Below, piece by piece: positions 4,007 through 63,199 of a stretch of DNA of 64,000 nucleotides. The notes beneath the pieces are model-generated. The model had not been told where the DNA came from and did no database searches. It was given only the letters and a program-made list of their open reading frames with translations. Source of the DNA: Macrostomum lignano (taxonomy: Eukaryota); contig NIVC01000266.1 in assembly GCA_002269645.1 (NCBI GenBank), positions 212,818 through 276,817 of the forward strand, in the 5' to 3' direction. Position numbers and translations under genes: made by a program. Every line of letters starts with the position of its first letter. Within the stretch, counting starts at the first letter, position 1.

Positions 4007-4082
<76 letters not shown>

Positions 4083-4158
4083 GAGGGCTGAAGAGATGAC
4101 TAAGAAAGTCACGACACCGCGTATGACGTATATGACACGCGCCAATCACATGGTTACA
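3655..4158. mobile_element. LTR-like interspersed repeat remnant with tandem CCAAT-box units and (GA)n at 4008-4080
   Basis: Begins TGTTAC and ends GTTACA, and contains repeated AGCCAATCAG boxes. A diverged second copy lies at about 29620-29850 (shared GGGCCC, TGCAGATAA, GGAGTGCG, CCAATCAGAA, AATAACAAGA, GATGACTA(A/G)GAAAGTC). No TSD found. Confidence 0.45.
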
Positions 4159-16536: not shown

Positions 16537-35470
<18,934 letters not shown>

Positions 35471-42510: not shown

Positions 42511-43776
42511 GGGGATGTTTTCTATTTAGGAATATGTTATGTCTGTTATCTTTTTGAAAGCTTTATTTCGTTGTCTTTTTGTTACTTTTGGAAAAAGGAT
42601 ATTCATAGCAAACATCTTTGTCCATGATAATTTTACTCGAATAAGGTGATTTATAAAACTGAAGAAGGAATTGGTTCTTAACAAAATGTGCTTTGGATGG
42701 ATTTGCATGAACTATTTTTGCTCCTTGCTTATTGGGCGCCCGAAGGGGACACTAGATTGCTAGTTTTAATAACTCCAAATGTTATTGGAAGCTTTATTAA
42801 GAGGATTTTCGGACAGATCAAAAGTACTCATAGATCAAAATGTGTCAATCTTTTGTTGATCATTCGAGAAGTCTCATAGAGAAAACTGTAACTCTCTATA
42901 ATGCTGTCAGCACACGTACAAGCAACCAACATACTTAAAGTACCAGTCTGTTTAAAATTTATTTTTTCTAATTTGTAACAAGAATGAGCAACTCCATTAT
43001 CGCAGTGCAAGGACGATTGAATAAGGAATGCAGATGTGCCATCCACTTAAATCAATTTTTGAGTATTTTTTAAAAGTATCATTGACTCTCGTTGGTTATG
43101 TCAATGTCAATGTAATAACAATGTAATAACCCATTGACATTTCACCATTGACAATTGACCTGCATTTCTTACAATTACTACACCTGGCACTGCGGTTATC
43201 TAAACAGACATTGAGTAAACTATTTAACTACTAATTTGATTTAAAAAATCGCGGCAAAACATTCAACAAATCGTTAGTTTTTCATGAACTTGTTTCACTC
43301 ATTCACGCCTCTCCTCGCGCTTCCGGCGTTCCAGTTCCGCCCAGGCAGCGGCGATGCGCGCTGGGTGAACAATTGGCTGCTGCCGCTGTTCGTCGTCCTG
43401 ATTGATCAGGATCCCCATCAGTTCGTCCGAGTCTAGGAAAAACACTGCCTTCCGTTGCGCGATCCCTGGTGGAGCTAATGTAATGTGCTAATATTGAGTT
43501 TCGATGGGAATACACTTTCTGTTGACCCATCCTGCTTCAAGTTAATGCAAGTCTTTAATTATTAAACTATTATTAGAAAAAATATTTCTGCAAAGTTTAT
43601 TGGACAAAAAACGGAAGAATTTCTCACCATTGTTCATGCTCATAAAAAGAGCAAACTTTGCCACCCAGTACTCCAGTGATGCAAGTCTCAATCTATCTTT
43701 CATTGGAAGCTGTTGAGCTTCAGTTGGCTGCTTCATCAGTAAGAGAACGATAGGATCCACCCAAAAGATGATGGTC

Positions 43777-46700
43777 TCAATACAGTCTTCCATTTGCACT
43801 GAAATTTTCATTTTTAAGTTCCATTTTAACCATCGGGCTTAGGTTTTTGTGAAACTCATGCAAACATCCATTGACGAGAGACTTACCGCTCTCTCCTTCC
43901 TCGCTACCGGCGATGTAGTCGAAGTGCACGGACAGGTACTGATCACGCGGTGCTTGCTCACCTTCCGGCTCGTCCACGGCATATCGCTTCCGCTCCACTT
44001 TGGCGCAGTCTTCACACGGCAAAAGTGGCAGCTCCTGAGATGCTGTGGCAGCCGGATGCTGCGCTGGCTCTTCTTGTGCGGCCGCCTCCGCCAGCTCGCG
44101 AGGGTCTCGGGCGTCAAAGACTTGCCTCATCGCGGCGGGTAGTCCTCCGAGCCCCTCCAGACTCACGGAGCGCGACAGCCCGTACTGGCTGACACTGAGT
44201 CCAGACGGGCCAACGCCAAACGCCCAACAGCGAACTCTACGGGCTGTCGCCTTGGCCTCGAAACTTGCCACGGCAGATGGAGAGAAGCTGCCGAGCCCGG
44301 CGTCAGTGAAGACAAGCACGTGCCGCTGGCCCGATGGGTCTCGTAGCAGCAGCTGCAGCAAAGCCGTTAGCGCAGGCCCATCCGCACTTGCCGCCTGATT
44401 CGGATCAGGGGCCTCGCAGTTTGTCACCGAGCCAAGCAGTCGCGCCTTGTCTGCTGGGCTCCAGCCGACGCCAGCCGTCTTTACGACACTTACTGACTGC
44501 GAGAACGTCACGCAGCATGTGGAGACATGCTGGTGGTCCAGAGCCTCTGCTAGCGATACCAGGCTGTGGAGCAGCATTGGACGCGACGATACAGTGCTAG
44601 ATGTGAGGGAGACAGCTATGCCTACAGCAATCCTGCGCTCTGTGACTCTGTGCCTTTGTAGCCAGATTTTGTTGCTAGTGCCATTTGTCATGAACCAGTT
44701 CATCAGGCCCCTGATGCTCAGCTTCTTGCCTCTGTTTGCCAGATGGTATCGCATCCGCGAGTGCTGGTTGGAAACTTGAATACTGCTAATAATCCGGTTG
44801 GTGCATGGGTCCACTTTTGCCGCTAATTTCTTCCACATTTCATCCGCTGCATGGATTCCGGTGACATCGCTGAGTTCAGTTAGGTATCGCCGCATTTCGG
44901 GCATACTCAGGTTCGCTACTTCACCGGACAGATTTTCGTATTCGTGATATTGCGTCGTTATCTGTTCTTTGTTTAGCCCAAGGTCGTAGCCTTTATTTTC
45001 GCACTCGAGCCACTCTTCCAAAACATCCTGCCGGGGCTCGGGCACGAACTGACCGCATGGGTCTGGCTGGCTTTGCACTACTTGGGCATTAGCAGCATTG
45101 GTAATAAAGGAAAGTTCTTCAGTCTCGGGGGCAGCAACGAAAGGGTTTTCTGGTCCGCTCCTTTCAATTCTTCCGTATTTCAGACACCAGTCCTCTTCAA
45201 TCCACAAGGCGGAGTAAATTTCACCCGAAAACTGTTGCAGAGAATCCTGGAACAGCTGGGAGCCAAAGCCTCTGTGCTGATCCGTGATTAAAATCACCCA
45301 CTGGCAGTCCAATATTTTCGAATCAGTTGCTAGGAGTTCGTCTGAATGACAATGCAGTTTGTGAAACACCTTGCGACAGGTGTGCGGCATCCAGGGGGTG
45401 TTAAAGTCTTTGATCGTTGCCGGTACGTTTGCCAGGGACATGAAGCCTTCGTTGCTGATTTGAACGCTTTTGTCCCCAGTGAGAACGATTTGAACTTTGC
45501 AGTTGTGCATTTCGGAATGTCTTACAACTCTGAATACAGCACGAGTGAGTTCATTTTCTTTTCGGCCATTGTTTTGCTTTTTCCACAGGGAGCATTTTGT
45601 ATCGATTAAAATGGTACCCCTCGTTTCCTTTTTAAGATTTGCATCTTTATGAACTCTTGTTTCCTTACTAACGGTGCTGAAGGAAGTCAAATGCTGGACT
45701 TGAAACCAATTCGAGGGATCCGCTGTGAAGATAGAAGATTCCTGAGGTGGACGCTGGGCTGGTCTTCTGTAAGAGCGTCGCGAGTGAATTGGAACGTGTG
45801 GGTGAGAGATCTCCACAAAAGTACCTGCTGTACTGGCTTCGTTATCTGAGTCGTCTATTCCAGCACTGAACTCTTGCATCCCAACCTCCAGCTCCGCGTC
45901 AACGTTCGATCGCGGACTAAATTTCATAACCCGACCGGTTGCTATTTCTGTCGATATATCTCCGCCAACAGCACCTTCCACTATGCTGGCATCTGACAGA
46001 TGACCAAGGTGGCCCCTTAAAGGATCAAAACTGCTATCAGCTGCATCGCTTTCTTCAAAATTGGTTGCTGTCGTAGAGGCAGCACTGGGTCCTTCTGCAG
46101 CTGATGCTGGGTTTCCCTCTTTTTCTATCTTTTGTGCATGCTCTGACATGAAAGTAGAATCTGGCTTGCCCTCAGCCGTTTCTTCCGGGAACGAATCAGT
46201 CGGTATTGGCGCTTTTAGAGCTGCACCAAATGCTTCTGACTTGGCTGTTTCTTCCTGTGCAGAGGCTCCTTTACTCGCTTCTGTTGGTTTTGTTTCTTCA
46301 GTTGATTTTTCATCAGGTTCTGTCGCAGCTTCAGATTCTTCTGCATTCGGAGGTTTCATTTCGCTTTGATCTGTTTCCCTGCTTTCTTTTCTTTCTTTAT
46401 CATTGATATCGCTCGTTTGGTTTGTATCACTCGGTGACTTACTTTCGGTATTCTGACCAGCTTGCTTTTCTTTTTCTGTCGGTTCCGAATCGTTTGGTGC
46501 GAAAGTTTCCTCTTCAGTCTGTAGCTGGTCAGTTTCTGATTCTTCTTGCGAATCTTTAGCGGATTCCACATCGCGAGAGGTTTCGTTCTTGTTCGTTTTC
46601 TCAGAATACGACCCCACTTCTCCTTCCTGTTCTCTTTGCTCGGAACGGGATTCTGCTGCCCCGGCTTCTTCTACTGACTGACTCTGTTCATCACTAGTTT

Positions 46701-49653
46701 CCAATGGATCACTATTTGGACTGGATTCAACACATGAAGAGTCACTGTCCTTATGCTCTAAGAGCTCCTCCGCAGAAGACTCATCCTTGGGTGCCGTCCC
46801 GCCAGACTCGCTTCTTTCAGTCCCCGAGCCCGAAGGATCCGCAGACTCTGTCTGGCCAGACCCGCTTTCATTGGTTCCTGAGCCGGAAGGATCTGTAGAC
46901 TCTGTCTGTCCAGACCCGCTCTCATTGGTTCCCGAGCCCAGAGGATCTGCAGACTCTGTCTGGCCAGACCCGCTCTCATTGGTTCCTGAGCCGGAAGGAT
47001 CTGTAGACTCTGTCTGTCCAGACCCGCTCTTATTGGTTCCCGAGCCCAGAGGATCTGCAGACTCTGTCTGGCCAGACCCATAGCCACCAGTCGAGGAGTC
47101 TTTTGCCTCCGACTGGCCCATGATTTGCTCGTCGGTCCCCATTGAAGGCGGAGGACTTTCAGTCAGACCGCTCTTCTCTGCATCAGCAATGGCCTCCTTG
47201 GCATTCTGAACTTTGTCCATCCACTTTTTGATTTCTTCTCCTCGCGGTCCAGCCAGGTCACTTTCAGTGGGCTGAGGATCTGAGCCTCCGCCTTCATCCA
47301 GCGAAAATCTATCAGCGTAGCTGTTAGCGATCGCCGACTTTAGCTCCTTTCTTAAATCCTCTTCCTTCGTAGTGGAGCTGAGAGCAAATCTGAATGCGCC
47401 GCTTGCATCTTTGTTGTTGATATTTGCACTATAGGACACAACTGTAGCTGCTTCTGTCCCATCCTCTTTTCCTCCAGAAATCACCAGTTTTTTCATCGGA
47501 TTTTTCTCACGACTGTCCAACTCGGTCTCGTTCTCGATTTCCTTCTCGTAGGCATCAATGCCGCAAATTGCCGACTGAACAAAGTCCACCCCTTTTATAA
47601 TCGCGTGTGTTGCGGCACGAGCAAGCTGCAGAAGTACCTGGCAAAATTGGTAAAAAAGCCACTTGATTCCCGAGTTTGATTCGACCTTTTCCCTCATCTT
47701 CTTGATGCTGTCATCCATCTTTTGCTCCAATTTCTTGAGAAGTTTTCGAACGCTACTGATTATTTCTTTGATTAATTTCTTTATACTGAACGTGCTGTTC
47801 AGTCGGATGTCCCAGTCAAGAAATCTCCGCTGGTTCTCTCGTTCACCAAAGTTTAGCATTACTTCGACGGAAATAATTTTGAAGAAAGTGACCTTAAACC
47901 GCGCGTAGAAGCACTTTTTGGCGGTGTCTGTCTCTATCTTGGCAGCTACTTCGATAATAAAAAATATGCTCACTTTGACGTCCATCAGGAATTTTAGTCC
48001 CGTTGCTTTGCTCACAACCAAGTGCAGCTTTGGCCCCGCCTTGCCGTCGGTGCTGCTCACCTCAAGCAGGTCGAGCAATTTTAAGGGCTCTACGAGCTCA
48101 CCTCCGAACTCAATCTTCTTATCTTCGCCATGAAAGGTAAAGCCTCCCCATAGTTTAGCGTTCATTCCGAGCCAGTTGATGGCCGCATCGAATTTGACGC
48201 ACGGTCCGATCTCATATCTTTCCGTTAAGCCTTCCGGGTTGCCTCCGCCTACGTCTTCCGGTGTTCTGACAGCTTTTTCAGTCATTTGCTGCTGACCGTC
48301 AGGAAAACTATGGACGAGGAATTTTATTGACTCCATATTTTCATTGGCGGCGAGATAAAGAAAGAATAAATGGTTGAAGCCCGGCAGCAAGAAGTCAACG
48401 TTGTTCGCCAAGACTTCATCAACGCCAAGAAGCTTTAGAAGATTGGAAAACCGCAGGGTCTGCTCCTCGTCTTTTTGAAATCGGAAGTAAGCCCCTACAG
48501 GAACGACACGAGTAGGTGTAACCAAATCTTCTTTTCTTGTCATGAATCTAATGCGAAACTCAATGTCGCTCTCGAACAACTTCATGGCAGCTGCTACTTC
48601 AAAGCTTAATGCGTCTGGCGGAACGGAAATCGAGAGCTGCATCGAAGCGGAGATCAGTGTTAAAAACTTTAGACCAAAGGGCGTTGGCCAGGCCAAGTCA
48701 TCTTCGCCGGTTATTTTCAGAGTACCTGAAATTTCTCGCTTTTTGCCACTGCTTTCGATGCTAAGCCTGCCTGAAAACTCAGCTTTGTGTTTGGCGTTTC
48801 CTAAGAATTCGGTGGGAAGATTTATATTCATCTTGGCATCCAAGAAAAGCTTGGTTATTCCTTGAGTCTTCTTTAATAACTTGCCATCTGCATCAGTCTG
48901 CTTTGATGACTCTTTAGCTGCTTTAATGTGCACGAGTCCCAAGGAGAAGCAGAGCGACACGCAACCAAACAGTTCCACCGAGCCGCACTCGATGTCCAAA
49001 CTAAAGCCGCTGCTCACAACGCTAAGACAGCCAGAAAAGGTTTTTCCCGTCAAGCTTAGAAAGTCGTACAGCCAATTCTGCGGCATGGTCGCCTTGAATG
49101 ACAAGACTGCAAATGGTGTTTGTTTAGTTTTCTTCACGCATTCAGTCACGAAAGTTGAATCGTAGTTCATTAATTGCTTCATTTTATCAGATGCCTCGCT
49201 CAGCCTTTCACTGCAAATCTGTTCATTCGCTTTTTTAGAGCGCAGAAGCAGCACGAGCTGTAAGTTGTTGAACACTGGGATAAGCTCGATTGATTCGACC
49301 ACTTCAAGACCGTGCCAGATTTCGCTGAGTTTCCCTTCGTATACTACGCACACTAAGTAGAAGAATTCTTTTTTCGGGAATCCACCCGTCATTCCAACCT
49401 GAAACCCTTGTGGATTTCTGCAGGCAATCGCAAACTTCTTTTCCTTTAAGTAAACTTTCACCGCGGCTCCACTTTCTTTCAGGTTGACCTCCCCAATCCG
49501 AGCAAGGGCGCTGCTGAAGCAGCTGTCCAAGGAATCCTGGTCGACAATGCTGCTGGCTTGCAGCTTGCCGTCGGATTCACCGGCATCTGCCGTGAGCTTC
49601 GGCTGAGACTTCTTCTGAAGTGTCAGCACACCGTTCGGCAGATCCAGCACCAT
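43777..49653 (-). CDS. MDN1: C-terminal ORF segment (1958 aa): beta-rich region, helical segment, D/E/S-rich region, vWA-like domain, midasin-type vWA
   Basis: Long open frame. vWA strands RIAVGIAVSLTSS...HVLVFTDAG...CWAFGVG. Continues by a +1 homopolymer frameshift into 43542-43811 and a last exon ending near 43300. Confidence 0.85.
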   Translation of the reverse strand: MVLDLPNGVLTLQKKSQPKLTADAGESDGKLQASSIVDQDSLDSCFSSALARIGEVNLKESGAAVKVYLKEKKFAIACRNPQGFQVGMTGGFPKKEFFYLVCVVYEGKLSEIWHGLEVVESIELIPVFNNLQLVLLLRSKKANEQICSERLSEASDKMKQLMNYDSTFVTECVKKTKQTPFAVLSFKATMPQNWLYDFLSLTGKTFSGCLSVVSSGFSLDIECGSVELFGCVSLCFSLGLVHIKAAKESSKQTDADGKLLKKTQGITKLFLDAKMNINLPTEFLGNAKHKAEFSGRLSIESSGKKREISGTLKITGEDDLAWPTPFGLKFLTLISASMQLSISVPPDALSFEVAAAMKLFESDIEFRIRFMTRKEDLVTPTRVVPVGAYFRFQKDEEQTLRFSNLLKLLGVDEVLANNVDFLLPGFNHLFFLYLAANENMESIKFLVHSFPDGQQQMTEKAVRTPEDVGGGNPEGLTERYEIGPCVKFDAAINWLGMNAKLWGGFTFHGEDKKIEFGGELVEPLKLLDLLEVSSTDGKAGPKLHLVVSKATGLKFLMDVKVSIFFIIEVAAKIETDTAKKCFYARFKVTFFKIISVEVMLNFGERENQRRFLDWDIRLNSTFSIKKLIKEIISSVRKLLKKLEQKMDDSIKKMREKVESNSGIKWLFYQFCQVLLQLARAATHAIIKGVDFVQSAICGIDAYEKEIENETELDSREKNPMKKLVISGGKEDGTEAATVVSYSANINNKDASGAFRFALSSTTKEEDLRKELKSAIANSYADRFSLDEGGGSDPQPTESDLAGPRGEEIKKWMDKVQNAKEAIADAEKSGLTESPPPSMGTDEQIMGQSEAKDSSTGGYGSGQTESADPLGSGTNKSGSGQTESTDPSGSGTNESGSGQTESADPLGSGTNESGSGQTESTDPSGSGTNESGSGQTESADPSGSGTERSESGGTAPKDESSAEELLEHKDSDSSCVESSPNSDPLETSDEQSQSVEEAGAAESRSEQREQEGEVGSYSEKTNKNETSRDVESAKDSQEESETDQLQTEEETFAPNDSEPTEKEKQAGQNTESKSPSDTNQTSDINDKERKESRETDQSEMKPPNAEESEAATEPDEKSTEETKPTEASKGASAQEETAKSEAFGAALKAPIPTDSFPEETAEGKPDSTFMSEHAQKIEKEGNPASAAEGPSAASTTATNFEESDAADSSFDPLRGHLGHLSDASIVEGAVGGDISTEIATGRVMKFSPRSNVDAELEVGMQEFSAGIDDSDNEASTAGTFVEISHPHVPIHSRRSYRRPAQRPPQESSIFTADPSNWFQVQHLTSFSTVSKETRVHKDANLKKETRGTILIDTKCSLWKKQNNGRKENELTRAVFRVVRHSEMHNCKVQIVLTGDKSVQISNEGFMSLANVPATIKDFNTPWMPHTCRKVFHKLHCHSDELLATDSKILDCQWVILITDQHRGFGSQLFQDSLQQFSGEIYSALWIEEDWCLKYGRIERSGPENPFVAAPETEELSFITNAANAQVVQSQPDPCGQFVPEPRQDVLEEWLECENKGYDLGLNKEQITTQYHEYENLSGEVANLSMPEMRRYLTELSDVTGIHAADEMWKKLAAKVDPCTNRIISSIQVSNQHSRMRYHLANRGKKLSIRGLMNWFMTNGTSNKIWLQRHRVTERRIAVGIAVSLTSSTVSSRPMLLHSLVSLAEALDHQHVSTCCVTFSQSVSVVKTAGVGWSPADKARLLGSVTNCEAPDPNQAASADGPALTALLQLLLRDPSGQRHVLVFTDAGLGSFSPSAVASFEAKATARRVRCWAFGVGPSGLSVSQYGLSRSVSLEGLGGLPAAMRQVFDARDPRELAEAAAQEEPAQHPAATASQELPLLPCEDCAKVERKRYAVDEPEGEQAPRDQYLSVHFDYIAGSEEGESGKSLVNGCLHEFHKNLSPMVKMELKNENFSANGRLY

Positions 49654-52600
49654 GCCAAGCCGCAGCTTAAACAGGTCAAACAGGCAGAACAGCTTTCCTT
49701 TCCCGAATCGCCGTCCGCAGGCGCCTTGAACGCACCGAGCTCCTCCTCGCTCTGTGGCGTCTGATTAGCTTCATTGGTATTCTTTGCTCTTTCGAGCTTC
49801 AACTTTGCTCCAAGGCAAATAATTTTAAAAGGTTTTATCTGGCCCGTAGTCTCACCAATCACTTCTAATTCGAAAGAATTCAGTGTTCTGTCGGGCTGAA
49901 TCTTGGCTTCAAAATGTAAGAGCTTGAATGTCAGATCAATTTTTTTACTTAGAGATTTAACTTGCTCCTCGAGTTTGAATTTCTCGGCAACAATTGCAGC
50001 CAAATCTCCCAGGCTAAAGTCGATCTTTTGTCGAGGAACAACTATGGTCCATGGTTGCTTTATCTCCAGGGGTAGCTCGACCTTGCAGTCTACGATTCGC
50101 AGGTGCTTCACTTCAGGTCTTCCAAGACAAAATGCGAAGTTCAGAGTCGCAAGCTTGAAACTGCTGTCAAACTTTTTATCGCTGCCCTCTTCGCCATTCG
50201 CAGACGCGCCAGCTATTTCTTGCTGTTTCTTTTCAACTCGAATCTTCAAGTCCTCGAGTCGGAGTAAGGTGCAGTTTGGAATTAGGCAAAGCCGCTGCAG
50301 TCCGAGCACAAGTACCCAAACATCGGGTTCCACCGCCTTCGTCCAGCTGAAATGAACTCCAACATCCGTAAGTATGAGGCCAAAGTCTGGCAGACTTGTC
50401 TTTAGCACACGGCCAAACAGCTCGTTCAGTTTGATGTCTTCCGGAAGCCTTGCAGTGCTGCCGGTTCCGTCAAAAGATTCCGGCAATTCCAACAGCCAGC
50501 ACTGGCGACCTTTTTCAGCCGGTCTGTGGAATTTCAGTTTGAGCCTACCCAGTCTAAAATCAGCCAGGGTCAGGTCAGCTGTCAGCTTGAAGTCAGACGT
50601 CGCTGAGTTGGAGTAAGTCCACAAGAAATCGATTTCAACAGATCCCAGCTTCAGTAGACTTGTGAAAGGCAATCTCAGCTCCTTGATTTTTGCCTCAAGT
50701 GTCAGTTTATGAGTCTGACTCGCGGCGGCTTTGCTTTCTTTACCAGACTCTCCAGCTTCTGATGACCCGGTTTTGATGGAACGGCTTTCTTGGCTGCTCT
50801 TCGATGCTCCAAGCTCTGTCCTGTTCTCGTACCTCACTCTGAGCTTCTCAAATTTCACGAACTTAAGAAGTGGGACGTCAACTAGACTTGAGTTGATCTT
50901 CAGCAGTTCAGCAAAGGGTTTCATTAGTTCCACCAGAGTAAATTGGGCTTCAATATGAGCATTCAATGTGAACTGCATTGAGTCCTTGTCTCTTTTAACT
51001 TCTGACACGTAATCTAGGATGGGCAGAGTAAGGAATTGGATTTTTCCTTTAAGCGAGACCTGAAAGTGCCTGTCCTGATCGAAACTGGTTACTTTCATGC
51101 TGAATTCCGAATCTGTGAGCTCAATCTTCATCAGGCCTTTCTTCAATTTAATCAAGTCAATTGTCATCGCCAGCTCGCAGGTTTTCTCTTTGAAGTCTAA
51201 ATAGCCACTGACGAGCTTGTCAAGATTGGTTCTGACCAGCACTTCTGGTATTGCCTCGGCTGACACTTCGAAATTCTTAGACACAAACGTTTGAAGACTG
51301 AAAGTTCCTGTACCATTTTGACGCGGCAAGACCTTCAACTCGTTGCTGGATGTCAAAACAAATCTCGAGCCATTGTCTTCACATTTTAGTAGAAGCTGAC
51401 AATCAAGAATGTCGAATACGGCATAGAAAGTGCACTTCGTTGGGCTTTCAGTTCTTATCTGCACACAGAAGGCTTTGCCTGCTAAGAGCTTTGAGACTCT
51501 GAATGAGTAGCTCTTGGTCAGAGTTTCTAGTAAGAATCTCTTTAAGCTGTTGTCGAAATTCCACTCGATATCAACAGCTGTTTCGGTAAACTGCATTACT
51601 GATGGAACACCGTAGTTGGACAGGTCAACACCCCGCCCCATGCATTCTGCCAGCAGGGACACTACGTCAGTACTTGAGTAGTGCGTTTTCAGATCGCACT
51701 GACTGACTGCCCAATGCTGGTCGTTGATGGGGTAGGAGGCGGACAGAGTTGGAGTTTTCAGCTTCGCGCAGTTTCCCAGCTCCAGAACCATTGACAGACT
51801 TGGATAGCGGAGCATTTCGTCAATGAGGGTGTGCACCTCTCCTCTGCTGGTGCTCAGCTCTATTTCTGTAAGAGTCAACATAGGGCTGAGGCTGACGGGC
51901 TTCATATTAAGCATCATTTCTAATTCTTTTGGCTTCGTCCAATCGTTCCACTCCATCGAGTAGTTGCATTTTTCAACCATGACTCCTCTAGTGGCTTCAT
52001 TCTCTCGCGACAGCCGGCTCGCTACAAGTACAGAAAGGTCGAACGGCTCAATAGATTTGTCATCGGTTTGTAGCTTCCAACAAGTTCTTTTTTCTGCATT
52101 CCTATCCGCTGTCTGACACTGCAACTTGTTCTCATGCTCACACAGTAGAATGCTGAAGTGTCCTAAGTTCTGTCCGTGCAGAATGAGATCTCCCTCAATC
52201 AGGCTGCCGCACCATTTCTGATGCGCGGCCTTCCTTCCATGGTTCCGCAACACCATGCTGACTGACCGCAGCACAAGCTGGCTATCAACCTCGGAGTGAA
52301 TGTCAGAAGAAGCTTTTGCTGTTAACTTTAGTTTCCATTTTGATATGTCAATGCGAATTTCCACTCCGCTGATTGGCACATTCGGGAACGGCTGCTGCAC
52401 CTCCAAGTTCATGTCCTTCATTAGCTTGAGCAAGAGGCTTCCTCCATCATCTTTCGCCTGACTGGAAGAACAAAGCGTTAGTTGCAGCTGCTTGGACTTA
52501 CCGGCCCCTGTTTCTTGTGCTCGTGTTATTTTTAAATCAAACTCGATGCCTAAAAGCGACAGCAGATCCATCTTTCCTTTTATGCGCACGACCATGTCCG

Positions 52601-55639: not shown

Positions 55640-58600
55640 CTCAGCGTCTCATCAAAAATGTCTTCCATGAGACTCGACGCATCAAGCAGCATTCCATTTT
55701 CAATAAAAATAAAATGTGTCTCAGATCTCTTGCGGTCACTTGCTCCCTTTTTGCCTTTTCTGACGTTTTAAAATTGTTGATGAGACGTCGAACGATGGAA
55801 GCAATTTCGTTGTTGCATAGAGTTCCATCTCTTAGCGGCGCGAACAGGTCAGGAAAGCAGTCCGTTTGCGGATCCAACTTGGGACAGAAAATCTCAATGC
55901 AGCGGTTGCGGAAAGATTCAGACAGCTGAAAGCTGCTACTTCTACCGATTGTTGCTGTGCAGATGAGAGCAAATCCAGGTTTCGGATCGATTCCGCCCTT
56001 CGGTCCGTCAGTGAGAGCCACTTCATGGACGTACAATCGCTGGCCCGACTCGCCAATGGAATTGAGCCTCTCGATCACCTCTGGTCTCGCCGTGGTCAAC
56101 ATTGTCCAGCAGGATCCAGTTACCATTCTTCATCGACTTTTACTAGAGGCCCGTCAACAAACTGAAAGCTGTTTTTGGAGCACTGCCTGACCGGGGAGAG
56201 AAGCCGCCAATGAGGTCGCAGACGTCAGTATCAGCATGAACCGCAACAGTGACCAGCTGCTTGCTGCACCGCCGAGCCAGCTCCGCACTGCGCTGCTCTT
56301 TCCGGAAACTGGAGGTCCTAGTAGAAGTAAGATTTTTACCACTTCCAATCGATTGTTGCAGGAGACGCACGAGTCTGTCGGACGCGTCGCAAGGATTCAG
56401 CCTCTGACTTGAGTGTAAGAAGTCCCCGCGGCTGGTAAAAGCTCTCTTAGCTGTTTCTTCTGGAGACTCGCAAACAGCTAGTTTGCTTATCAGCTCCATG
56501 GGTTTCGGAACTACTGGAAGAACTACATTCGCAGTATACAATACCAAGAGCTTCTTTCACAGTGTTATGCGCGTTCAACAAGCCGACAACCTTTCTACAT
56601 CTCTAAGTTGAATTTACGATCAAAGTGGCCAGACGGCATGCGTGATCTTTACAGCTAGCAACCATTTGCAGTGAAATGAAGCCACTGCTTTCAGTATTCG
56701 GACCAAATTCATTTCGAAACTTTTCGATTATTTCTTGCGTCTCTTTCTCTCCGATGACGTCCACGCTTACTCCGTTTAGCAGCTTTGACAGAGCTGGCGG
56801 GAGCTCCTGGCGTCCTCCGCCAGAACTTGCCGGGTTCATCGCGCACACAAACTGCAGCTGCAATGCGACATGTTATAGAGAACAGAGTTTTACAGATTAC
56901 ACCTTGACTAAACTTTCTGTATACAACTAGGAAACCCTAATGATGAATAACTCAATTTTCTATAATTCAACAGCGTTGTGTCAATTGCTTCTTACCTTTT
57001 TCAGGGAATATTCCTTAGAGTTCACAACCATCTTGTGCCTTTAGGATGCTTCATGATCCCTAAAATAATTTCAGAGAACACTGGCAATCAAGCAAATGAC
57101 ATAAAACGATAAAATGTACTTCTATTAAAAGCGATTTGTTCTGCTTACCAATAATTGTGCTCAGACATTGCTGGGAGCCAAATTAATTTCGTCGAATAAA
57201 ATAAACGGCTCCTTGATATTCATCGGGACTTTTCGGTTTTCTGCCCGCCATTCGAGCAGAGTCGGCCACTGCTGCCTGCTCCAGAATTGCACCCTCTCTG
57301 AATTGAAACGTCATTTTGGTAGCTTTAGTTCCCGAATTCGAGTGCGCCGTTGGAACAAATGACCCAAATAGGTCTTCTTGAGAAAGATCACTAGAGCAGG
57401 AAATTCTGATGAACTTCTTTTGAGAACCGATTCTGCAAAATATCCTCTGATTTGGGTCTTGCCAACTCCCGGAGGTCCAACGAGGTTGACCACTGATTCA
57501 GTGTAATGAGCAATTAGCAAGTGGCTAAGTACTTCTTTTGCCCGCCGGGTTACTGTCAGATTCTGACTCACTCTTTTGAAACTCCTGTTCTGAGAATAGC
57601 GATGCTTCAGACAGAATTTCGTTTGGACTGTCACTTTGTGGAAATTCCTGCTTCAGGGCGAGACTAAAAGGTGATTTGCAACATTTTGGAGGAATTTTTG
57701 CAAATGATGCCATGTTGACTAGGCTCTTCACACTCAGAATTCCATTTGAGAGTTTCAAGGCTTCGCTAAGGCCACGGTCGATGTCTTCCGACAAAGAGGA
57801 AGGGATTGACGATTCTCTGCTCAGGATATCCCGAAAGAAGACTCAGCCTCGCTGCTCTGCTCACATCTGTCAGCTGAGGATCTCGCACATGAATCACTGT
57901 GTACCGCGACCTCATTGAGGGCGAGATGTCTTTGTCCGTTGGCAAAGAGATTGTGGCTATTAGTTTAAAGTTCACGCTCAAAGCGATCGGAGCATCAAAC
58001 TGATGAGGATGAGTAAAGCTGGGCTCTAACTCGGTCACGCTGTTGAGGCACTCAATAACTGCCTGATCAGCAAGGTTAATGTCTCTCAGGAAGGCAATTC
58101 CACCGAAGCGAATATTTCTCATGATTCCCCTCTCACAGAAAGGAAAAATCTGAGATCCGATGAGCAAAGGGACAAGTTTTGCAATGTTTCATGCGCGAAC
58201 GCTGCATCAGAGAGGAGGCATTGCTGAGGACAGCCGATAAAATCAGCTGAGTGCTGCTTCAGTATGTCGCAAAACTGACTTGACTTGCAGCTCTTCCATC
58301 TCTCTACTGCAGGTGATTGCTTGAATGGGGCTGGTAGTTCGTTTGTAAGTCGATTTCTAAGCTTGGAGCAAGTGCTTTCGAAGTACGATGTGCATTTACT
58401 GAAGCTCTTTGCCTTGCTCGGATACCGCGTCATCAGCAACTGTGCAGCTGGATTGGCGCAAGTCTCTTCGAAGGACTCCGCTGAGTGCGGCTCGATCCCG
58501 CCAAACAGATCTCGGGTCTCGGTTAGATCCGACATATACAAAGTAGTCAGTCTGCAAAGCTCAGGAGCACCAAAGTCTACGATTTGAGTCAGGTGGCGCA

Positions 58601-61513
58601 CCATCGTTGCTTTAAAATTCGTCCGGCCTTCGAGCACCACGGGCTCAGCGAAGTGGAGCGCCAGTGCAAGCTTGCAAAGGCTCAGCTGTTCGCTCCTTAT
58701 CATGGGCTGCGGAAGGCTTTTTCTGCAGCGCTTTCAGCTTCACAGACACAGTTGCCGACACAGCTGCATCTCGAAAGAAAATTTCAAAGAGCCAATCGTT
58801 TTCGACGCATCAATTTGCAGTCCAAAACTGCTGCTTGAGGTGGAAATAGGTCCATCAAAACGGCAACGTGTAGCTTCACCTTTTCCAGCCAATTTTCTGC
58901 GCTCAAATCTTCCGTAATGGTGAGTCGTCTCACAAGCTTTAAAAGAGTTCTCAAGGTTGTTGAGTTTTCGATTGGTTGTGGTGACCCTGCAAATATTTAA
59001 CAAGCTCTTGGATTCGAGTTTCTCATCTCCGAGCTTGATAGCTCGCTACTAAAGAGATTTTTTGCCACATTTTTCATGAATGACCTTGCTCCGTGTATAG
59101 TCCTGATAGACTTTTATTTCGCTGCTGGGTTTGTTCTGCTTCATCGAGTCTGCAACAAACATGCTACTTTTCCGTAGAGGATGTCGACGATCTCATCGCG
59201 AGTGTAATCTGGTACCGAGTACTTCACCAGTCTGGCCAGCACAGGTTCTGGAAGGCACTGTCTTCCAACATATTCTGTCGGATTTTGCGTACCACAAGGC
59301 AAACTCCGGGTGAACATCAAGCCATTGTTGTCGAATCGAGCAACGAAATTTGCTGCCACCGCTCAGAAGAGGCGTCAGATAGCTCGTGACTTCGGGCGAT
59401 GCCAAATTAAGCTCGTCCGCAATAAATATGCTTCCTTCTCTCATGGCCTTGCTCAGCGGCCCTTCTTTGAACTTGGCCTTCGTCCATCAGGCAGATAGCA
59501 GCCCATTAGGTCAGTAACAACTGTGTCCTTGTTGAACAGAAATATAACTGGCCTGGCCGCATAGCCTAAATGATTGCTCACTAGCTTTACAAGCGATGTT
59601 TTGCCTACTCCGGAGTGCCCTTCCAGCAGCACGGAATCTTCATTCTGAGGAGAACCATTTAAACAGGCCAGCCAGTTTCTGTCGAGACTCCCAAAGAGTG
59701 TACACTGGACTGTCAAGAATAACATTCTGTGTCCATTCGTGTTTGCATTCTACGGACGACTCAAGCACTAATTCTGCAATGCTTTTAACTACTTGAAACC
59801 AGTCATAAAGAGAATAATTTTTGCCATCTAAAGCGATAGGCTTCTTGGCCAAGTAAGGTTTCCGTTTACGAATTGGGCTATCTTCCCGGATCGAGGCGTA
59901 AATCAGTTTACATTTTATCGTCGAATCTTGTTCGCGCATCGGCAAGTGACGGAACATCAAGTCCAGAATTCTTCGAGCATTGTTTCTGCTCATTCGATTC
60001 GCGATAAAGGATTCGACATCCGAGCTCAATATGTTTTCCGGCACGTCAAATATGACGAAGCGACTGAGGAACGACTGGGCCAACTCGAATAGTTCGTTCT
60101 GACGCTGCTGACTGAATGTGGCGAGCACAAAGAAGCTTGGATCAACCGGCACCATCTTGCCGTCAATTAGATAGCGGCGCTCTGGCCCTGTCTCCAATAG
60201 TGCGTTCAGAGACTCCAAGACTGCCTTTTCTACCAAGTTAATCGACCTTGAGTACCAGGCATTTTCCCTCTTGATAGCTTCGAGCTACTGCGTCCGTCAA
60301 CCCATTGGAATGCGGCTCCTGAATCCTAAAATGAAACATCAAAAATGATTTCAAAGATAAAAAGATAAGGTACTCGTACATGAGTTTTCGAGAGCTACGG
60401 TAAATAAAAAGTACAAAAGCTCACCTGGGGCTGAAACTGTCCCACCAGATCGTCAGTTGATGTTTCAGAATGGCAATAGTATTCCTCAAGTTCGATGTTT
60501 CTCTTCTTTGCCCAAATCCAAATGGCGGTGAATTTTCCGAGAAGCTTTCCCCGACCAGCATGCCGGGGCCTCTTCGTGTCATGACAGAGATCAAGATACT
60601 CCATAGTGTCGCTGTAGGTGCTGAGTACTGCCACTTCGCCAATTCTCAGGTCGGATAGATTTTGGGACACCTGCTTGGGTCCGAATTCCAATTTGCAAAC
60701 TTTCTTGAACAAGCGTATGAGTTTCTTCAGCTTGCGAAGCAGTATTTTCGCTGTGCCGAGAAAAAAGACACATGAGCCGGTTTTGTCACTTCCTCGGGCT
60801 TAGAATTGATAATAATGTCTTGAGCATGCAGCAAATCTCGAAGAGTAACATGCAGTTTATCTTTGAACTTCCTGTAGATTGAAATCAGTTTATCGGCCAT
60901 TTGAGTATTGCCGTCTGAGCATCTGCCTTTTAATATTTTTTTTCGACATCATCATCAGGCAGCTTTGAAAAAGTTAAGCGGACAAAGTGTGGCTCATAAG
61001 AGACTTTGAGAAACGAAGACTGTCGAATCCAAAAACAACGACATTCGAATTTTGACAAAGGAAAAGGCGAAAAGTTCGGGTGGCGTCGGTAGCACAGACA
61101 TCCATTCTCCGCATCTGACTGGCCGGCGATGAGGCTGTCCCGAATTTGCAGCATCCCTGTGTCCAGAACGTCCTCCAAAACCCGCAAAACAGCGTCACTC
61201 GCCAGATTGGCCTCGTCAACAGAAGCCAATAGCCGTCCCTGACTGCTCGGGTAAAGATGCCTGGCTCGAACCGGAACTGCGATCCGGATCCCGAACCAGC
61301 GAATCGAACACTCCCGAGTAGGTCTGCCGCGCTGGTGTGTGGTGACAGGGTAAATCGCAGCAGCGGGCGCCGGAGATGGCAGCGCCAATACCGAACTGAG
61401 AACGTCTTTCCTGTGGCTGGTTCGCCTTCAATAAAGACGGGCATGTTGGAGTTGATCAGCAGTAATAGGCGCTCAACATTTTCTTTGGTCCGGTCAGTAA
61501 ATACGAAGTTCAT
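55640..61513 (-). CDS. MDN1: Six tandem midasin-type AAA+ modules (fragmented)
   Basis: AAA1 about 61513-60950; AAA2 about 60700-59950 (QFQPQ|DSGAAFQWVDG, LESLNALLE); AAA3 about 59700-59150; AAA4 about 58680-57880 (degenerate EGRTNFK, RDINL); AAA5 about 57520-56700; AAA6 about 56350-55850. Confidence 0.85.
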
Positions 61514-63199
61514 TGTTTCGTGCTCTCAACCGCTTGTTTCATGCTTTCTGAAATTTCCGATGGAACACTTCTAGACTTTGTCTTGGCAGTCTTATTCGCA
61601 AGTGATCGTCGAAGAGCTCCTCAACTTCTAGCTCTCTATTTTCGTGGATACTCAGAAAGAGCTCCTGTACAAAATAATTTTCTTGAGGTAGCTTTCCTTG
61701 GAGTTTCAAATGCTTCGTAAGCTTCTCGTGGCTGAACTCAGACATCAGAGTATCCATGTACTTTTTGTCACTCCTTTTCCCTGCTTTGATGAATGGCAGA
61801 AATCTGTTTTTGTCTTTATTTGCTTTAGTTTGTTGTTGCTTTTTCGCAGTCGGCTGTGTAATACCAACAGGTGTGGGTAGCGGTCGACTAGACCTCACGC
61901 TCCACCTATTGCTTTTGCTTTTCTTAGCCACCTGCTGCTCCAGAAACAGTCACCTTTTGATCCACTGAGCCTATGATAATGTCAAGACATCGCGCGTCCA
62001 ACACCTCATCTGGCAAAGCGACCTCATCGGAATCTTGCTTTAACTTCCGGATCTGAATCACTGACTCTTCGGATGGGTTCACCAAATAGTAGGCGTTCTC
62101 GAGAGGATCCGTGGCCAGCCTTATTGGAGCATCGAGTGCTGCTTCACCGGCCTGAGTGACGTCCCAGTCAACAGACAGAGCAATCACATCGGTTTCGCGG
62201 TTAAGCTGTCGACAATACAGCCCTCGGCTTTGAAAATGCATCGATTCGGTCACTCTGGTGACCAAGCGGGCGGTGCATAACTTCCAAACCCGCTGATGCA
62301 GAACGACCATGCGAAGGAGAAGCTCATCATTCAAGTTAACAAAAGACAGCGCCTTTAACATCCGATCGACAATAGATGGTTGGAGTTTGTTCTTTCAGGC
62401 GGTACTAGATAGAATTGCATTCGGTTCGAACTGTCCTTAGCAAATATTGTGCGCGAAATCGGAATTCTCTGAAACCTGATAGTGAAGCACCGATCTCAGG
62501 CTCAACTTGTGCTCTAATCGAAGGTCATGCTGGTCGAAACCAGCTTGATTGTTCTTGTAAACCCTGATTCCAGCCCAGGTGGTGAATCAGAGTGCTTTCG
62601 GTTACTACAGCAAAAACATCGGTGCTAAGCCACACTAGCTTTAGCGCTTTCTCAGCCTGCAACGAGTGCACAGCAACGGGAGACCATGGTGAGCTCGAGG
62701 CAAAGTCGAATACTAGTACTCGATCGGCAGAGTTTCTTCGAACCACAACCGCAAGCCTCGAAGTCGTATCGTTCGGTACGGTGTGAACAATGGCGTCATT
62801 GCCACACTCGGGTATGACGAATCGGCGAAGCGTGTAAGATTCCGGGTCAAAGACAGTCGTGCTAGTTCACTTCAGAGCCCTTCAGTCCCAGAATATCCGG
62901 TAAACTGTACGAACTGTGGATAACGGCCGAAGTCTTCGTGAAGAACACATCGTGCAGTTTATAGTTCTTGTCAGGACCCGTACCACGTCAAGTCTGAAGG
63001 GGAAGTTATCCCCTTCCATGCCTGAGAGCTGGGGAATAAAAGGAGCATTTTCGGGCGTTTCGCTTCTTGCTGCGCAATTTACGATCAAAATTCTATCAAA
63101 TCAGAAATTCAGTCAATGCAGCGAAACTGTGGAAATGTTAAGAGCCTTATTATCCGAAACTAGAGCTAGTTAATTAATTGATGGGTAAGCAGCAAGATG

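What the first reader, a model, noticed from the sequence alone, without database searches (positions are those of the whole stretch)
43300..63100. Giant midasin-derived AAA+ machine with a non-canonical architecture
Seen: six midasin-type AAA modules, an acidic region and a midasin-type C-terminus. However, these are preceded by about 500 aa of beta-rich (propeller-like) sequence and connected by about 2400 aa of beta-strand-patterned linker. Established: Rea1/MDN1 has an alpha-helical linker and a single MIDAS that pulls UBL-domain factors (Rsa4/NLE1, Ytm1/WDR12) off pre-60S particles. Inference: this is not the housekeeping midasin but a neofunctionalised paralog, possibly a giant AAA-vWA remodelling or defence protein, conceptually like RNF213 or bacterial MoxR-vWA systems. 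This is the strongest candidate here for an undescribed system.
Basis: partly seen in the sequence, partly recalled or inferred. Interest (0 to 1): 0.85.

Follow-up and report, generated by a model that had tools for sequence, protein, structure and literature searches.

The report
Midasin-like giant ATPase, distinct paralog family
The region encodes a roughly 6,000-residue flatworm (Macrostomum lignano) protein that is laid out like the ribosome-assembly motor midasin but belongs to a separate, old and unstudied sister family with a beta-strand-rich arm. In this window the copy is broken by sequencing-type frameshifts and a retrotransposon insertion.

Summary
One minus-strand gene runs from 63019 to 43777. 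It encodes a ~500-aa N-terminal domain, six AAA_5 modules, ~2,000 aa of beta-amphipathic sequence, a 502-aa acidic tract (net charge -76) and a C-terminal domain that matches a midasin MIDAS profile. The organism is Macrostomum lignano (gene Mlig003175); database fragments match at about 99% identity.

It is not a canonical MDN1. It groups with a small "clade A" (Owenia, Paramecium, Paulinella, metagenome eukaryotes) through ring-wide alignments (310-1095 bits), against 85-230 bits to canonical midasins. Canonical midasins score 730-1920 bits among themselves. Clade A keeps Walker motifs in AAA1/3/5, not AAA2-5. Its MIDAS DxSxS motif reads S-L-T-S-S here. Only ~90 post-ring residues align to the midasin linker profile.

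Caveats:
- The window's 5' half carries about 57 one- or two-base frameshifts but few substitutions, so these look technical.
- A 919-nt retroelement fragment with a 10-nt target-site duplication interrupts an exon of this copy.
- The ORF2/ORF3 junction near 49.7 kb is unresolved.
- A separate MDN1 in this genome, any defence role, and the fold of the beta region could not be tested.

The parts
43777..63019 (-). Whole gene (M. lignano Mlig003175 copy). The conceptual product is about 5,990 aa after frame repair.
   Evidence: P0001 matches 63019..57150 with 1893 of 1920 residues identical. P0187 matches 58101..49626 with 2424 of 2441 identical. An unbroken ORF runs 49653..43777.
61523..63019 (-). 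N-terminal domain (residues 1-497), beta-leaning and possibly a clathrin-terminal-domain-like propeller.
   Evidence: Conserved with P0034 (E 1.7e-47) and P0035 (E 1.1e-12). A profile of the three sequences hits only clathrin heavy-chain N-terminal propellers in the PDB, at E 0.26-0.9. No Pfam match.
60640..61522 (-). AAA1. Walker A GEPATGKT and Walker B LLLDEANLA are both intact.
   Evidence: Matches nodes 234-525 (AAA1) of the canonical midasin profile at 90 bits.
59685..60639 (-). AAA2, degenerate: Walker A GESFSGKF, Walker B position VLRSINL. Contains intron 60326-60424.
58741..59684 (-). AAA3. Walker A GHSGVGKT and Walker B FIADELNLA are both intact.
   Evidence: Pfam AAA_5 best stretch 1091-1226.
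57588..58740 (-). AAA4, degenerate: GRTNFKAT and FLRDINLA, with 179 residues between the two motifs (65-93 in the other five modules).
56434..57587 (-). AAA5. Walker A GPPGVGKT and Walker B ILFDEINLA are both intact. Contains introns 57060-57148 and 56858-56995.
   Evidence: position-specific match to canonical profile nodes 1736-2092.
55651..56433 (-). AAA6. Walker A GPPVSGKS is intact; Walker B reads ILLDNV, so the glutamate is missing.
   Evidence: match to canonical profile nodes 2185-2447.
48258..55185 (-). Beta-amphipathic 'linker' (residues ~2500-4500), interrupted in this copy by the retroelement.
   Evidence: Hydrophobic-moment analysis with controls. Strand-rich but low-confidence AF2 model. 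No similarity to the canonical linker. Continuous with the ring in NCBI PAA46920.1.
53904..54822 (+). 5'-truncated non-LTR retrotransposon fragment (RNase H plus C-terminal part), antisense to the gene and inserted in an exon.
   Evidence: RNase_H at 8.2e-07. Sequence and flanks read directly. Absent from the paralog proteins P0071 and P0187, which read straight through.
54823..54832 (-). Target-site duplication, copy 1 (agcaaacaga).
   Evidence: Read directly.
53894..53903 (-). Target-site duplication, copy 2 (agcaaacaga). The reading frame continues across it: ...SSNEKEQT|EVVNSPLDL...
53172..53172 (-). Single-base frameshift relative to PAA46920.1 (junction 1).
49587..49735 (-). Junction 2. 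ORF2 stops at 49625-49623 and ORF3 continues in the -1 frame. Candidates are a 1-nt indel in gggaaaggaaag, a 149-nt GT-AG intron, or a real stop. The in-phase heptamer G_GGA_AAG lies at 49704-49698.
45805..47310 (-). Acidic, Ser/Gly/Thr-rich low-complexity tether (502 aa, net charge -76) with a 54-nt tandem repeat at 46801-47079.
44056..44895 (-). MIDAS-like vWA domain. It carries the midasin-type motif GKKLSIRGLMNWF...NKIWLQR. The DxSxS position reads S-L-T-S-S. A 'VLVFTDAG' stretch follows.

Best explanation
The locus is one copy of the Macrostomum lignano gene Mlig003175. Its ~6,000-residue product belongs to a distinct and anciently diverged sister family of midasin, called clade A here.

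Shown:
- The domain order is the same as in midasin: N-terminal domain, six fused AAA_5 modules, a very long middle region, an acidic disordered tract, and a C-terminal MIDAS-type vWA domain.
- AAA1, AAA5 and AAA6 (with the ~90 residues that follow it) match the corresponding positions of a canonical midasin profile.
- The family keeps Walker A and B motifs in AAA1, AAA3 and AAA5. AAA2 and AAA4 are degenerate. AAA6 keeps Walker A only.
- The middle ~2,000 residues have beta-type rather than helical amphipathic periodicity and do not align to the midasin linker.
- The MIDAS DxSxS motif has lost its aspartate.

Inferred mechanism, by homology with Rea1/Mdn1 and MoxR-vWA pairs:
- The single-chain ring hydrolyses ATP, mainly at the three intact sites.
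- It moves the long arm relative to the ring.
- It thereby pulls on a ligand held by the tethered vWA-like domain, which may dock back on the ring.
- The N-terminal beta-rich domain supplies the attachment to the target.
- The substrate is unknown. It need not be a pre-60S factor, and binding is probably not by classical metal-dependent MIDAS chemistry.

State of this copy: the many frame breaks in the 5' half of the window are assembly-type indel errors. In addition, an exon of this copy carries a genuine retrotransposon insertion, so the copy is probably not translated full-length. Paralogous copies g2 and g3 are uninterrupted at that site.
For: Identity of the gene:
- P0001/P0002 (UniProt A0A1I8I014, A0A1I8JC40) match at 1893/1920 aa.
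- P0071 is PAA48319.1 (BOX15_Mlig003175g2) and P0187 is PAA46920.1 (g3). P0187 is 99.1% identical over 2417 aa with no gaps and spans AAA4 to the end of ORF2.

Separate family:
- The exhaustive search gives P0034 799 bits, Owenia P0035 784, Paulinella 457, Paramecium 415 and JGI P0038 398. A plateau of canonical midasins follows at 265-320 bits.
- The top-HSP matrix has three blocks: clade A 310-1095 bits with HSPs of 1250-2100 aa, canonical midasins 730-1920 bits, and 85-230 bits between them.
- Module-by-module tblastn matches in the same order run along the metagenome contigs L001 and L002.
- The Walker pattern is conserved across clade A, whereas Rea1 has catalytic motifs in AAA2-5 (PMC11603028).

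Common origin with midasin:
- PDB midasin hits.
- Position-specific profile hits for AAA1, AAA5 and AAA6 plus the residues after it.
- MIDAS profile hit that includes the GK+L..(D/N)KIWL.R motif.
- The acidic tract.

Beta-type linker.

Technical indels:
- About 57 frameshifts against about 14 substitutions.
- Shift sites are enriched at homopolymers, 62% against 41% background.

Insertion: a 10-nt target-site duplication with the frame continuing across it, and read-through in P0071 and P0187.
Against: - No experimental or expression data were available.
- The fold of the beta region, of the N-terminal domain and of the C-terminal domain is not established. AF2 without alignments gave pLDDT 31-35 and Foldseek gave nothing.
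- The MIDAS match is modest (26-32 bits). It was found only in a targeted search and was not reported by the full-length midasin profile at domain E <= 0.01.
- A canonical MDN1 in M. lignano was not demonstrated.
- ORF2 ends with a stop in both the window and PAA46920.1, so a single polypeptide is not proven.
- No protein record covers ORF3.
- It is unexplained why the indel-rich sequence ends exactly at the retroelement.
Confidence: 0.75

Rival explanations
1. It is simply the M. lignano ortholog of MDN1/Rea1, evolving very fast, and it still works in pre-60S maturation.
For: It has the same domain order and a MIDAS-type C-terminus. There are position-specific profile matches for AAA1, AAA5 and AAA6. 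UniProt auto-names the Owenia relative 'Midasin'. No second midasin of M. lignano was seen here.
Against: Clade A includes a ciliate, a rhizarian amoeba and an annelid. Its members are much closer to each other than to any canonical midasin. Canonical midasins from an anaeramoebid to birds stay at 730-1920 bits and 38-49% identity. The catalytic-site pattern differs. The lid families are missing. The linker is not alignable.
Confidence: 0.07
2. The locus in the window is a dead, decaying pseudogene copy, and the frameshifts are real mutations.
For: About 57 frameshifts lie in 7.9 kb and a retroelement sits in an exon. M. lignano carries about three paralogous copies of most loci (PMC10733133), so one copy could decay.
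Against: The indel-to-substitution ratio is about 57:14. Neutral decay would give far more substitutions than indels (my own expectation, not computed here). The 10 kb downstream has at most two breaks and an unbroken 5.9-kb ORF. Shift sites are enriched at homopolymers.
Confidence: 0.1
3. There are two products: a ~4,040-aa protein (ring plus beta region) ending at the ORF2 stop, and a separate 1,958-aa protein (beta region, acidic tract, MIDAS-like domain) from ORF3. This would resemble bacterial MoxR/vWA pairs.
For: The same stop is present in the window and in PAA46920.1. ORF3 begins with an ATG that overlaps the end of ORF2. In the metagenome relative L003, the 4,033-aa ring ORF also ends at a similar length, and a lectin plus MIDAS-like ORF follows it.
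Against: The -1 frame is already open and protein-like about 40 codons upstream of the ATG. The break lies in a gggaaaggaaag run of the kind that attracts indel errors. A GT-AG intron of 149 nt is also possible. In L003 the gap looks like a poly-A frameshift plus an intron within one gene.
Confidence: 0.18
4. It is an assembly chimera: an AAA-ring gene joined at a repeat to an unrelated beta-rich/acidic gene.
For: Sequence quality changes abruptly at the retroelement.
Against: A 10-nt target-site duplication flanks the element and the reading frame continues across it. Two independent NCBI proteins read through the site without the element.
Confidence: 0.02

Closest known systems
Midasin (MDN1 / Rea1 / Mdn1)
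   Same: - Single-chain ring of six AAA_5 modules. The spacing between Walker A and Walker B is 179 residues in AAA4, against 65-93 in the other five modules.
- Long middle region, then an acidic disordered tract, then a C-terminal MIDAS-type vWA domain with the GK+L...DKIWL+R motif.
- AAA1, AAA5 and AAA6 match the corresponding profile positions.
   Different: - 23-28% ring identity, against 38-49% among canonical midasins.
- Intact Walker motifs in AAA1/3/5, not AAA2-5.
- No midasin lid Pfam families.
- Middle region with beta-type periodicity that does not align to the ~1700-aa Rea1 linker.
- DxSxS reads S-L-T-S-S.
- Different, larger N-terminal domain.
(PMC11603028)
Clade A relatives: Owenia fusiformis CAH1795989.1, Paramecium tetraurelia XP_001437854.1, Paulinella micropora g75808, JGI 'MoxR-like ATPase' P0038, contigs L001/L002/L003
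   Same: - Ring-wide colinear similarity (28-40% identity).
- The same conserved Walker pattern.
- N-terminal domain shared with P0034 and Owenia.
- Beta-type post-ring regions in Paramecium and P0038.
- MIDAS-like domain in Paulinella, L002 and L003.

   Different: - The post-ring regions are not alignable with one another.
- N-terminal modules differ: WD40 and pentapeptide repeats in L002.
- L003 has a legume-lectin domain next to the MIDAS-like domain.
- None of these proteins is characterised.
MoxR-vWA chaperone pairs (RavA-ViaA, CbbQ/NorQ and the like)
   Same: The AAA_5/MoxR-clade ATPase works with a vWA partner. NorQ, CbbQ and CobS are the next-best PDB hits. Degenerate vWA metal sites are known in some of these systems (PMC7159879).
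   Different: Those are homo-hexamers of small subunits with the vWA on a separate protein. Here six modules, and probably the vWA domain too, are fused in one giant eukaryotic chain.
Bridge-like lipid-transfer proteins (VPS13/ATG2/BLTP, TamB/AsmA)
   Same: Only the look of the sequence: about 2,000 aa of alternating hydrophobic and polar beta-strand pattern.
   Different: There are no Pfam matches to any such family, no structural match and no significant internal repeats. This resemblance is a lead from my own knowledge, not a tested result.

Membership tests
Canonical midasin (MDN1/Rea1 orthologs) | Six concatenated AAA_5 modules in one chain | tested here: met
Canonical midasin (MDN1/Rea1 orthologs) | Groups with MDN1 orthologs by ring similarity (canonical members are 38-49% identical and score 730-1920 bits with each other) | tested here: not met
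   23-28% identity and 104-191 bits to canonical members. It falls in a separate block with clade A. A rooted tree was not built.
Canonical midasin (MDN1/Rea1 orthologs) | All catalytic motifs present in AAA2-AAA5 (PMC11603028) | tested here: not met
   Walker A and B are intact only in AAA1, AAA3 and AAA5. AAA2 and AAA4 are degenerate. This pattern is conserved in clade A.
Canonical midasin (MDN1/Rea1 orthologs) | Midasin-specific AAA lid families (PF17865, PF17867, PF21108) | tested here: not met
   Absent from P0001. Listed for the canonical fragments.
Canonical midasin (MDN1/Rea1 orthologs) | Rea1-type linker of ~1700 aa (stem, middle and top subdomains), alignable among orthologs | tested here: not met
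   The full-length canonical profile aligns control P0075 at 1361 bits over the linker and C-terminus. For this protein it aligns only to node 2447, about 90 aa past the ring. The periodicity is beta-type. The fold itself is not determined.
Canonical midasin (MDN1/Rea1 orthologs) | D/E-rich flexible region before the C-terminal domain | tested here: met
   502 aa, 22.7% D/E, net charge -76.
Canonical midasin (MDN1/Rea1 orthologs) | C-terminal MIDAS domain | tested here: met
   Canonical MIDAS profile hit at 26-32 bits, E 1.8e-8 in a targeted search. Positional phmmer hits in more than 40 midasins. Not detected by Pfam, NCBIfam or PDB phmmer.
Canonical midasin (MDN1/Rea1 orthologs) | Intact DxSxS metal-binding motif | tested here: not met
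   The aligned residues are S-L-T-S-S. The motif is also variable in clade A: D-L-S-F in Paulinella and D-P-G-V-F in L002.
Canonical midasin (MDN1/Rea1 orthologs) | Binds the UBL domains of Rsa4/Ytm1 and acts on pre-60S particles | not testable with these tools
   Needs biochemistry or genetics.
Clade A midasin-like proteins (defined here) | Ring-wide colinear alignment to the other members, with scores above the canonical-midasin plateau | tested here: met
Clade A midasin-like proteins (defined here) | Conserved Walker pattern: AAA1/3/5 intact; AAA2 GxxxxGK[FLAV]; AAA4 G.T.FK[AS]; AAA6 LLDN | tested here: met
RNF213-like AAA/E3 giants | E3 (RING/RZ) module attached to a dynein-like AAA core | tested here: not met
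   No such Pfam family was found in any part scanned.
Bridge-like lipid-transfer (RBG) proteins | Chorein_N/VPS13/ATG2-type families or a beta-groove fold | tested here: inconclusive
   No Pfam hits. The AF2 model is too poor (pLDDT 31). Foldseek found nothing at E <= 0.001.

The most novel reading that the evidence does not exclude
Clade A may be a third, functionally independent lineage of single-chain AAA_5 ring mechanoenzymes, beside dynein and midasin. In it the helical lever would have been replaced by a ~2,000-residue amphipathic beta-sheet arm, possibly a groove or surface that binds membrane, lipid or a polymer. An N-terminal clathrin-like propeller would recruit it to its target, and a metal-independent vWA-like hook would be pulled by three alternating active sites. 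It would act outside ribosome biogenesis. The family would have been lost from most model organisms, which would explain why it has gone unnoticed.
Probability: 0.3. Interest if true: 0.8.

Novelty: new variant of a known kind. Interest (0 to 1): 0.55.

Why it matters
To my knowledge, midasin, dynein and RNF213 are the well-studied proteins that fuse six AAA+ modules in one chain. A separate, old family with midasin's overall plan but a different active-site arrangement, a non-helical arm and a degenerate ligand hook offers a natural comparison. It bears on how such rings turn ATP hydrolysis into pulling force, and it points to an unknown cellular substrate.

The family occurs in at least one experimentally tractable animal (M. 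lignano, where transgenesis is established; my own knowledge, not checked here) and in Paramecium, so the question can be tested.

The analysis also turned up a further group, clade B (rotifers, a labyrinthulid), so the diversity of midasin-like giants is wider than the single MDN1 of textbooks.

On the practical side, the window shows how unpolished long-read sequence and a transposon insertion can make an intact gene look broken.

Tried and rejected
- **Ab initio exon chaining.** A codon-usage and GT-AG model skipped most AAA exons because the frames are broken by indels, not introns. It was replaced by protein-guided chaining.
- **Word-indexed homolog searches.** Searches with the 1,176-aa linker ORF and with the ORF2/ORF3 junction region found nothing. 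The first result was misleading, because PAA46920.1 is hidden behind a shorter cluster representative.
- **C-terminal domain by standard libraries.** Pfam, NCBIfam and PDB phmmer found nothing. Only a purpose-built midasin MIDAS profile detected the domain.
- **Structure prediction.** AlphaFold2 without alignments gave pLDDT 35 for the C-terminal 607 aa and 31 for 1,133 aa of linker. Neither model can be used to identify a fold. Foldseek on the linker model gave no match at E <= 0.001.
- **Internal repeats in the linker.** Only matches at E >= 0.03 in a tiny database, so no repeats were established.
- **Programmed -1 frameshifting at G_GGA_AAG (49704-49698).** The heptamer is in phase, but by my own estimate (not computed) an in-phase slippery heptamer would arise by chance in about 10-20% of overlaps of this length. 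The downstream RNA is no more stable than shuffled sequence (z = -0.69). Not supported.
- **Module-by-module Smith-Waterman scoring against one canonical midasin.** It gave no diagonal. The profile search was more informative.
- **Clathrin-like N-terminal propeller.** Only sub-threshold PDB hits and no Pfam hit. Kept as a lead.
- **Literature.** Searches for Macrostomum plus midasin or MDN1, and for midasin paralogs, found no description of this family.
- **Second midasin in the same species.** Species names for 30 representatives did not reveal a canonical midasin from M. lignano, Owenia or Paramecium, so the 'second midasin in the same genome' test stays open.

Full report
**What is in the sequence**

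The region holds one very long gene on the minus strand.
- Raw ORF listing shows two huge open frames, 53153..49623 (1,176 aa) and 49653..43777 (1,958 aa). Upstream of these is a patchwork of 40-250-aa ORFs in all three minus-strand frames.
- In the patchwork, AAA+ motifs sit in different frames with no room for introns. For example, GEPATGKT...GYWLLL is in one frame and VDEANLASDAVLRVLEDVLD is in the next, on contiguous DNA.
- A hand-repaired AAA1 matches solved midasin structures at 5e-67.

**Organism and gene**

- A search with the repaired ring returned two Macrostomum lignano UniProt proteins: A0A1I8I014 (P0001, 1,920 aa) and A0A1I8JC40.
- Chaining exact matches of P0001 along the window gives 1,893 of 1,920 identical residues from 63019 to 57150. 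This needs 42 changes of frame by one or two bases and only one real intron, 60326-60424.
- Two NCBI proteins of the Mlig_3_7 annotation extend this. PAA48319.1 (BOX15_Mlig003175g2, P0071) covers AAA4 to residue 2678. PAA46920.1 (g3, P0187, 2,441 aa) covers AAA4 through the whole of ORF2 at 99.1% identity without gaps.
- Against P0187 the window needs 20 more frame corrections between 57855 and 55072, two short introns (57060-57148 and 56858-56995), a 929-nt insertion, and one frameshift at 53172. From there to 49626 it needs nothing.

**Nature of the frame breaks**

- About 57 frameshifts occur in 7.9 kb, alongside about 14 amino-acid substitutions.
- 62% of the shift sites lie at homopolymers of three or more bases, against 41% background.
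- The 10 kb downstream has at most two breaks.
- Indels greatly outnumber substitutions. From general knowledge, neutral decay would produce many more substitutions than indels, so this is the signature of unpolished long-read consensus, not of evolutionary decay.
- M. lignano is a neopolyploid with about three near-identical copies of most loci, and 93% of short-read pairs map to more than one place (PMC10733133). That plausibly hampers polishing.
- It is unexplained why the error-rich stretch ends exactly at the transposon.

**The insertion**

- Between 54822 and 53904 lies a GC-rich, 5'-truncated non-LTR retroelement fragment on the plus strand (RNase_H, 8.2e-07).
- It is flanked by a 10-nt direct repeat, agcaaacaga, at 54823-54832 and 53894-53903.
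- With the element removed, the frame reads ...SSNEKEQT|EVVNSPLDL.... P0071 and P0187 have exactly this sequence.
- This proves that the ring and the beta-rich part belong to one ORF, and it rules out a chimeric join. It also shows that this particular copy is interrupted inside an exon.

**Junction 2**

- ORF2 ends with a stop at 49625-49623, and the same stop is present in PAA46920.1.
- ORF3 continues in the -1 frame, which is already open and protein-like about 40 codons upstream of its ATG.
- Four readings are possible:
  1. a one-base error in gggaaaggaaag;
  2. a 149-nt GT-AG intron, 49735-49587;
  3. a true stop giving two polypeptides;
  4. -1 ribosomal frameshifting at the in-phase G_GGA_AAG. 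The downstream RNA gives no support for this last reading (z = -0.69).
- In the metagenome relative L003 the ring ORF (4,033 aa) also ends at a comparable length. An ORF with a lectin domain and a MIDAS-like domain follows it after what looks like a poly-A frameshift plus an intron.
- I treat a single product as most likely, but this is not shown.

**Anatomy of the conceptual ~5,990-aa protein**

| Region | Residues | Notes |
|---|---|---|
| N-terminal domain | 1-497 | Homologous to P0034 and Owenia P0035 |
| AAA ring | ~498-2345 | Six AAA_5 modules |
| Beta-amphipathic region | ~2500-4500 | Does not align to the midasin linker |
| Acidic tract | 4816-5317 | 22.7% D/E, net charge -76 |
| MIDAS-like domain | ~5621-5900 | DxSxS position degenerate |

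- Walker motifs:

| Module | Walker A | Walker B | Status |
|---|---|---|---|
| AAA1 | GEPATGKT | LLLDEANLA | intact |
| AAA2 | GESFSGKF | VLRSINL | degenerate |
| AAA3 | GHSGVGKT | FIADELNLA | intact |
| AAA4 | GRTNFKAT | FLRDINLA | degenerate |
| AAA5 | GPPGVGKT | ILFDEINLA | intact |
| AAA6 | GPPVSGKS | ILLDNV | Walker A only |

- The beta claim rests on hydrophobic-moment periodicity. The 170-degree moment exceeds the 100-degree moment in 56-73% of windows there. The figure is 47% for shuffled sequence, 28-46% in the ring and 30-48% in the linkers of eight canonical midasins.
- A low-confidence AF2 model of 1,133 linker residues has 27 strands and 14 helices.
- For the N-terminal domain, a profile of the three sequences finds only clathrin heavy-chain N-terminal propellers in the PDB, at the matching position but at E 0.26-0.9. 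Pfam finds nothing. This is a lead only.

**The C-terminus**

- Standard libraries see nothing.
- The exhaustive search supplied full-length midasins, from which I built a profile of the last 340 residues of 30 canonical proteins.
- That profile hits residues 5621-5773 at 26-32 bits. The match includes the stretch RGKKLSIRGLMNWFMTNGTSNKIWLQRHRVTERRIAVGIAVSLTSS against the consensus GkRlnmkkiipyiAsqfkkDKiWlrRtkpskReYqiliaiDdsksm.
- phmmer of the C-terminus hits the same C-terminal position in more than 40 midasins.
- The DxSxS position reads S-L-T-S-S, so the first aspartate is lost. Clade A relatives vary at this position as well.

**Family placement**

- An exhaustive HMMER search with 1,200 ring residues found 4,841 proteins. 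At the top are P0034 (Logan, 799 bits), Owenia fusiformis CAH1795989.1 (784), Paulinella micropora (457), Paramecium tetraurelia XP_001437854.1 (415) and a JGI 'MoxR-like ATPase' (398). A plateau of canonical midasins follows at 265-320 bits. A Plectus fragment is 47% identical.
- A top-HSP matrix shows three blocks:
  - clade A: 310-1095 bits, with HSPs of 1,250-2,100 aa;
  - clade B (Hondaea, two rotifers, one transcriptome): 340-837 bits;
  - canonical midasins from Anaeramoeba to birds: 730-1,920 bits;
  - between blocks: 85-230 bits.
- Two metagenome contigs, L001 and L002, give module-by-module tblastn matches in the same order along the ring. L002 has WD40 and pentapeptide repeats at its N-terminus.
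- The Walker pattern above is conserved across clade A. In Rea1, AAA2-AAA5 carry the catalytic motifs (PMC11603028).
- P0001 lacks the midasin lid Pfam families that the canonical fragments carry.
- A 5,074-node profile of 27 full-length canonical midasins matches this protein position-specifically at AAA1 (90 bits), AAA5 (53 bits) and AAA6 plus ~90 following residues (66 bits). It matches nothing further along the linker. A control midasin aligns over the linker and C-terminus at 1,361 bits, and the Paramecium clade A protein aligns to node 2982.
- The simplest reading is a whole-gene paralog of midasin that split early in eukaryotes, survived patchily, and replaced or remodelled its middle region.

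**Mechanism (inferred)**

- By homology with Rea1/Mdn1 and MoxR-vWA pairs (PMC11603028; PMC7159879), the ring should convert ATP hydrolysis into movement of the arm. Here hydrolysis would be mainly at AAA1/3/5.
- That movement would put tension on a ligand held by the vWA-like domain, which is tethered through the acidic tract.
- The N-terminal beta-rich domain is the likely target-recognition module.
- The degenerate metal site argues for a binding mode different from Rea1's Mg2+-mediated UBL capture.
- The substrate, the cellular location and any defence role are unknown. Nothing here supports or excludes defence.

**What could not be done**

- I could not search the M. lignano genome for a canonical MDN1. 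The paralog verdict therefore rests on the similarity structure across species.
- No deep alignment could be built for the linker, the N-terminus or ORF3, so no reliable fold is available.
- Literature searches found no description of this family.

**Verdict**

The copy in the window is technically and physically disrupted. This is a new variant of a known kind and of moderate interest.

Noticed in passing
window 63019-55072 versus 53901-43777: The density of one- and two-base frameshifts drops from about 1 per 140 nt to at most 2 in 10 kb. The change falls exactly at the retroelement insertion, which suggests two stretches of very different consensus quality within one assembled contig.
   Followed up: partly
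proteins P0039, P0040, P0045, P0124 (Hondaea fermentalgiana, a transcriptome, Brachionus calyciflorus, Adineta ricciae): These form a second non-canonical group of midasin-like giants (clade B). Their mutual scores are 340-837 bits, against 85-230 bits to clade A and to canonical midasin. The canonical profile aligns to them from AAA4 to about 400 aa into the linker.
   Followed up: no
L003:13397-16849: Directly downstream of a 4,033-aa clade A ring ORF lies an ORF with a legume-type lectin domain and a MIDAS-like domain (E 6.5e-18 to the clade A profile). A poly-A run and an intron-like gap separate the two ORFs.
   Followed up: partly
window 49704-49698: A canonical-looking slippery heptamer, G_GGA_AAG, lies in phase with ORF2 at the point where ORF3 continues in the -1 frame. 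The downstream RNA is no more stable than shuffled sequence.
   Followed up: yes
window 1-43000 and 63209-64000: Most of the rest of the window is minisatellite arrays, for example 17.0-18.9 kb, 19.8-23.2 kb, 24.0-26.9 kb and 27.4-28.3 kb. A 20-nt repeat of 39.6 copies starts about 190 nt upstream of the gene's start codon.
   Followed up: no
window 34334-35470 (+): A 378-aa ORF with one hydrophobic, transmembrane-like stretch and poly-Q and proline-rich tracts. It has no Pfam family.
   Followed up: partly
window 46801-47079: A 54-nt (18-aa) tandem repeat of 5.2 copies encodes GSGQTES(A/T)DP(L/S)GSGTNES units inside the acidic tract. It is likely to vary in length between copies.
   Followed up: no
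tool behaviour: The word-indexed protein search reported no homolog for the 1,176-aa ORF, although a 99% identical NCBI protein (PAA46920.1) is in the collection. That protein sits in a 90%-identity cluster whose representative (PAA48319.1) is shorter and does not cover the region.
   Followed up: yes
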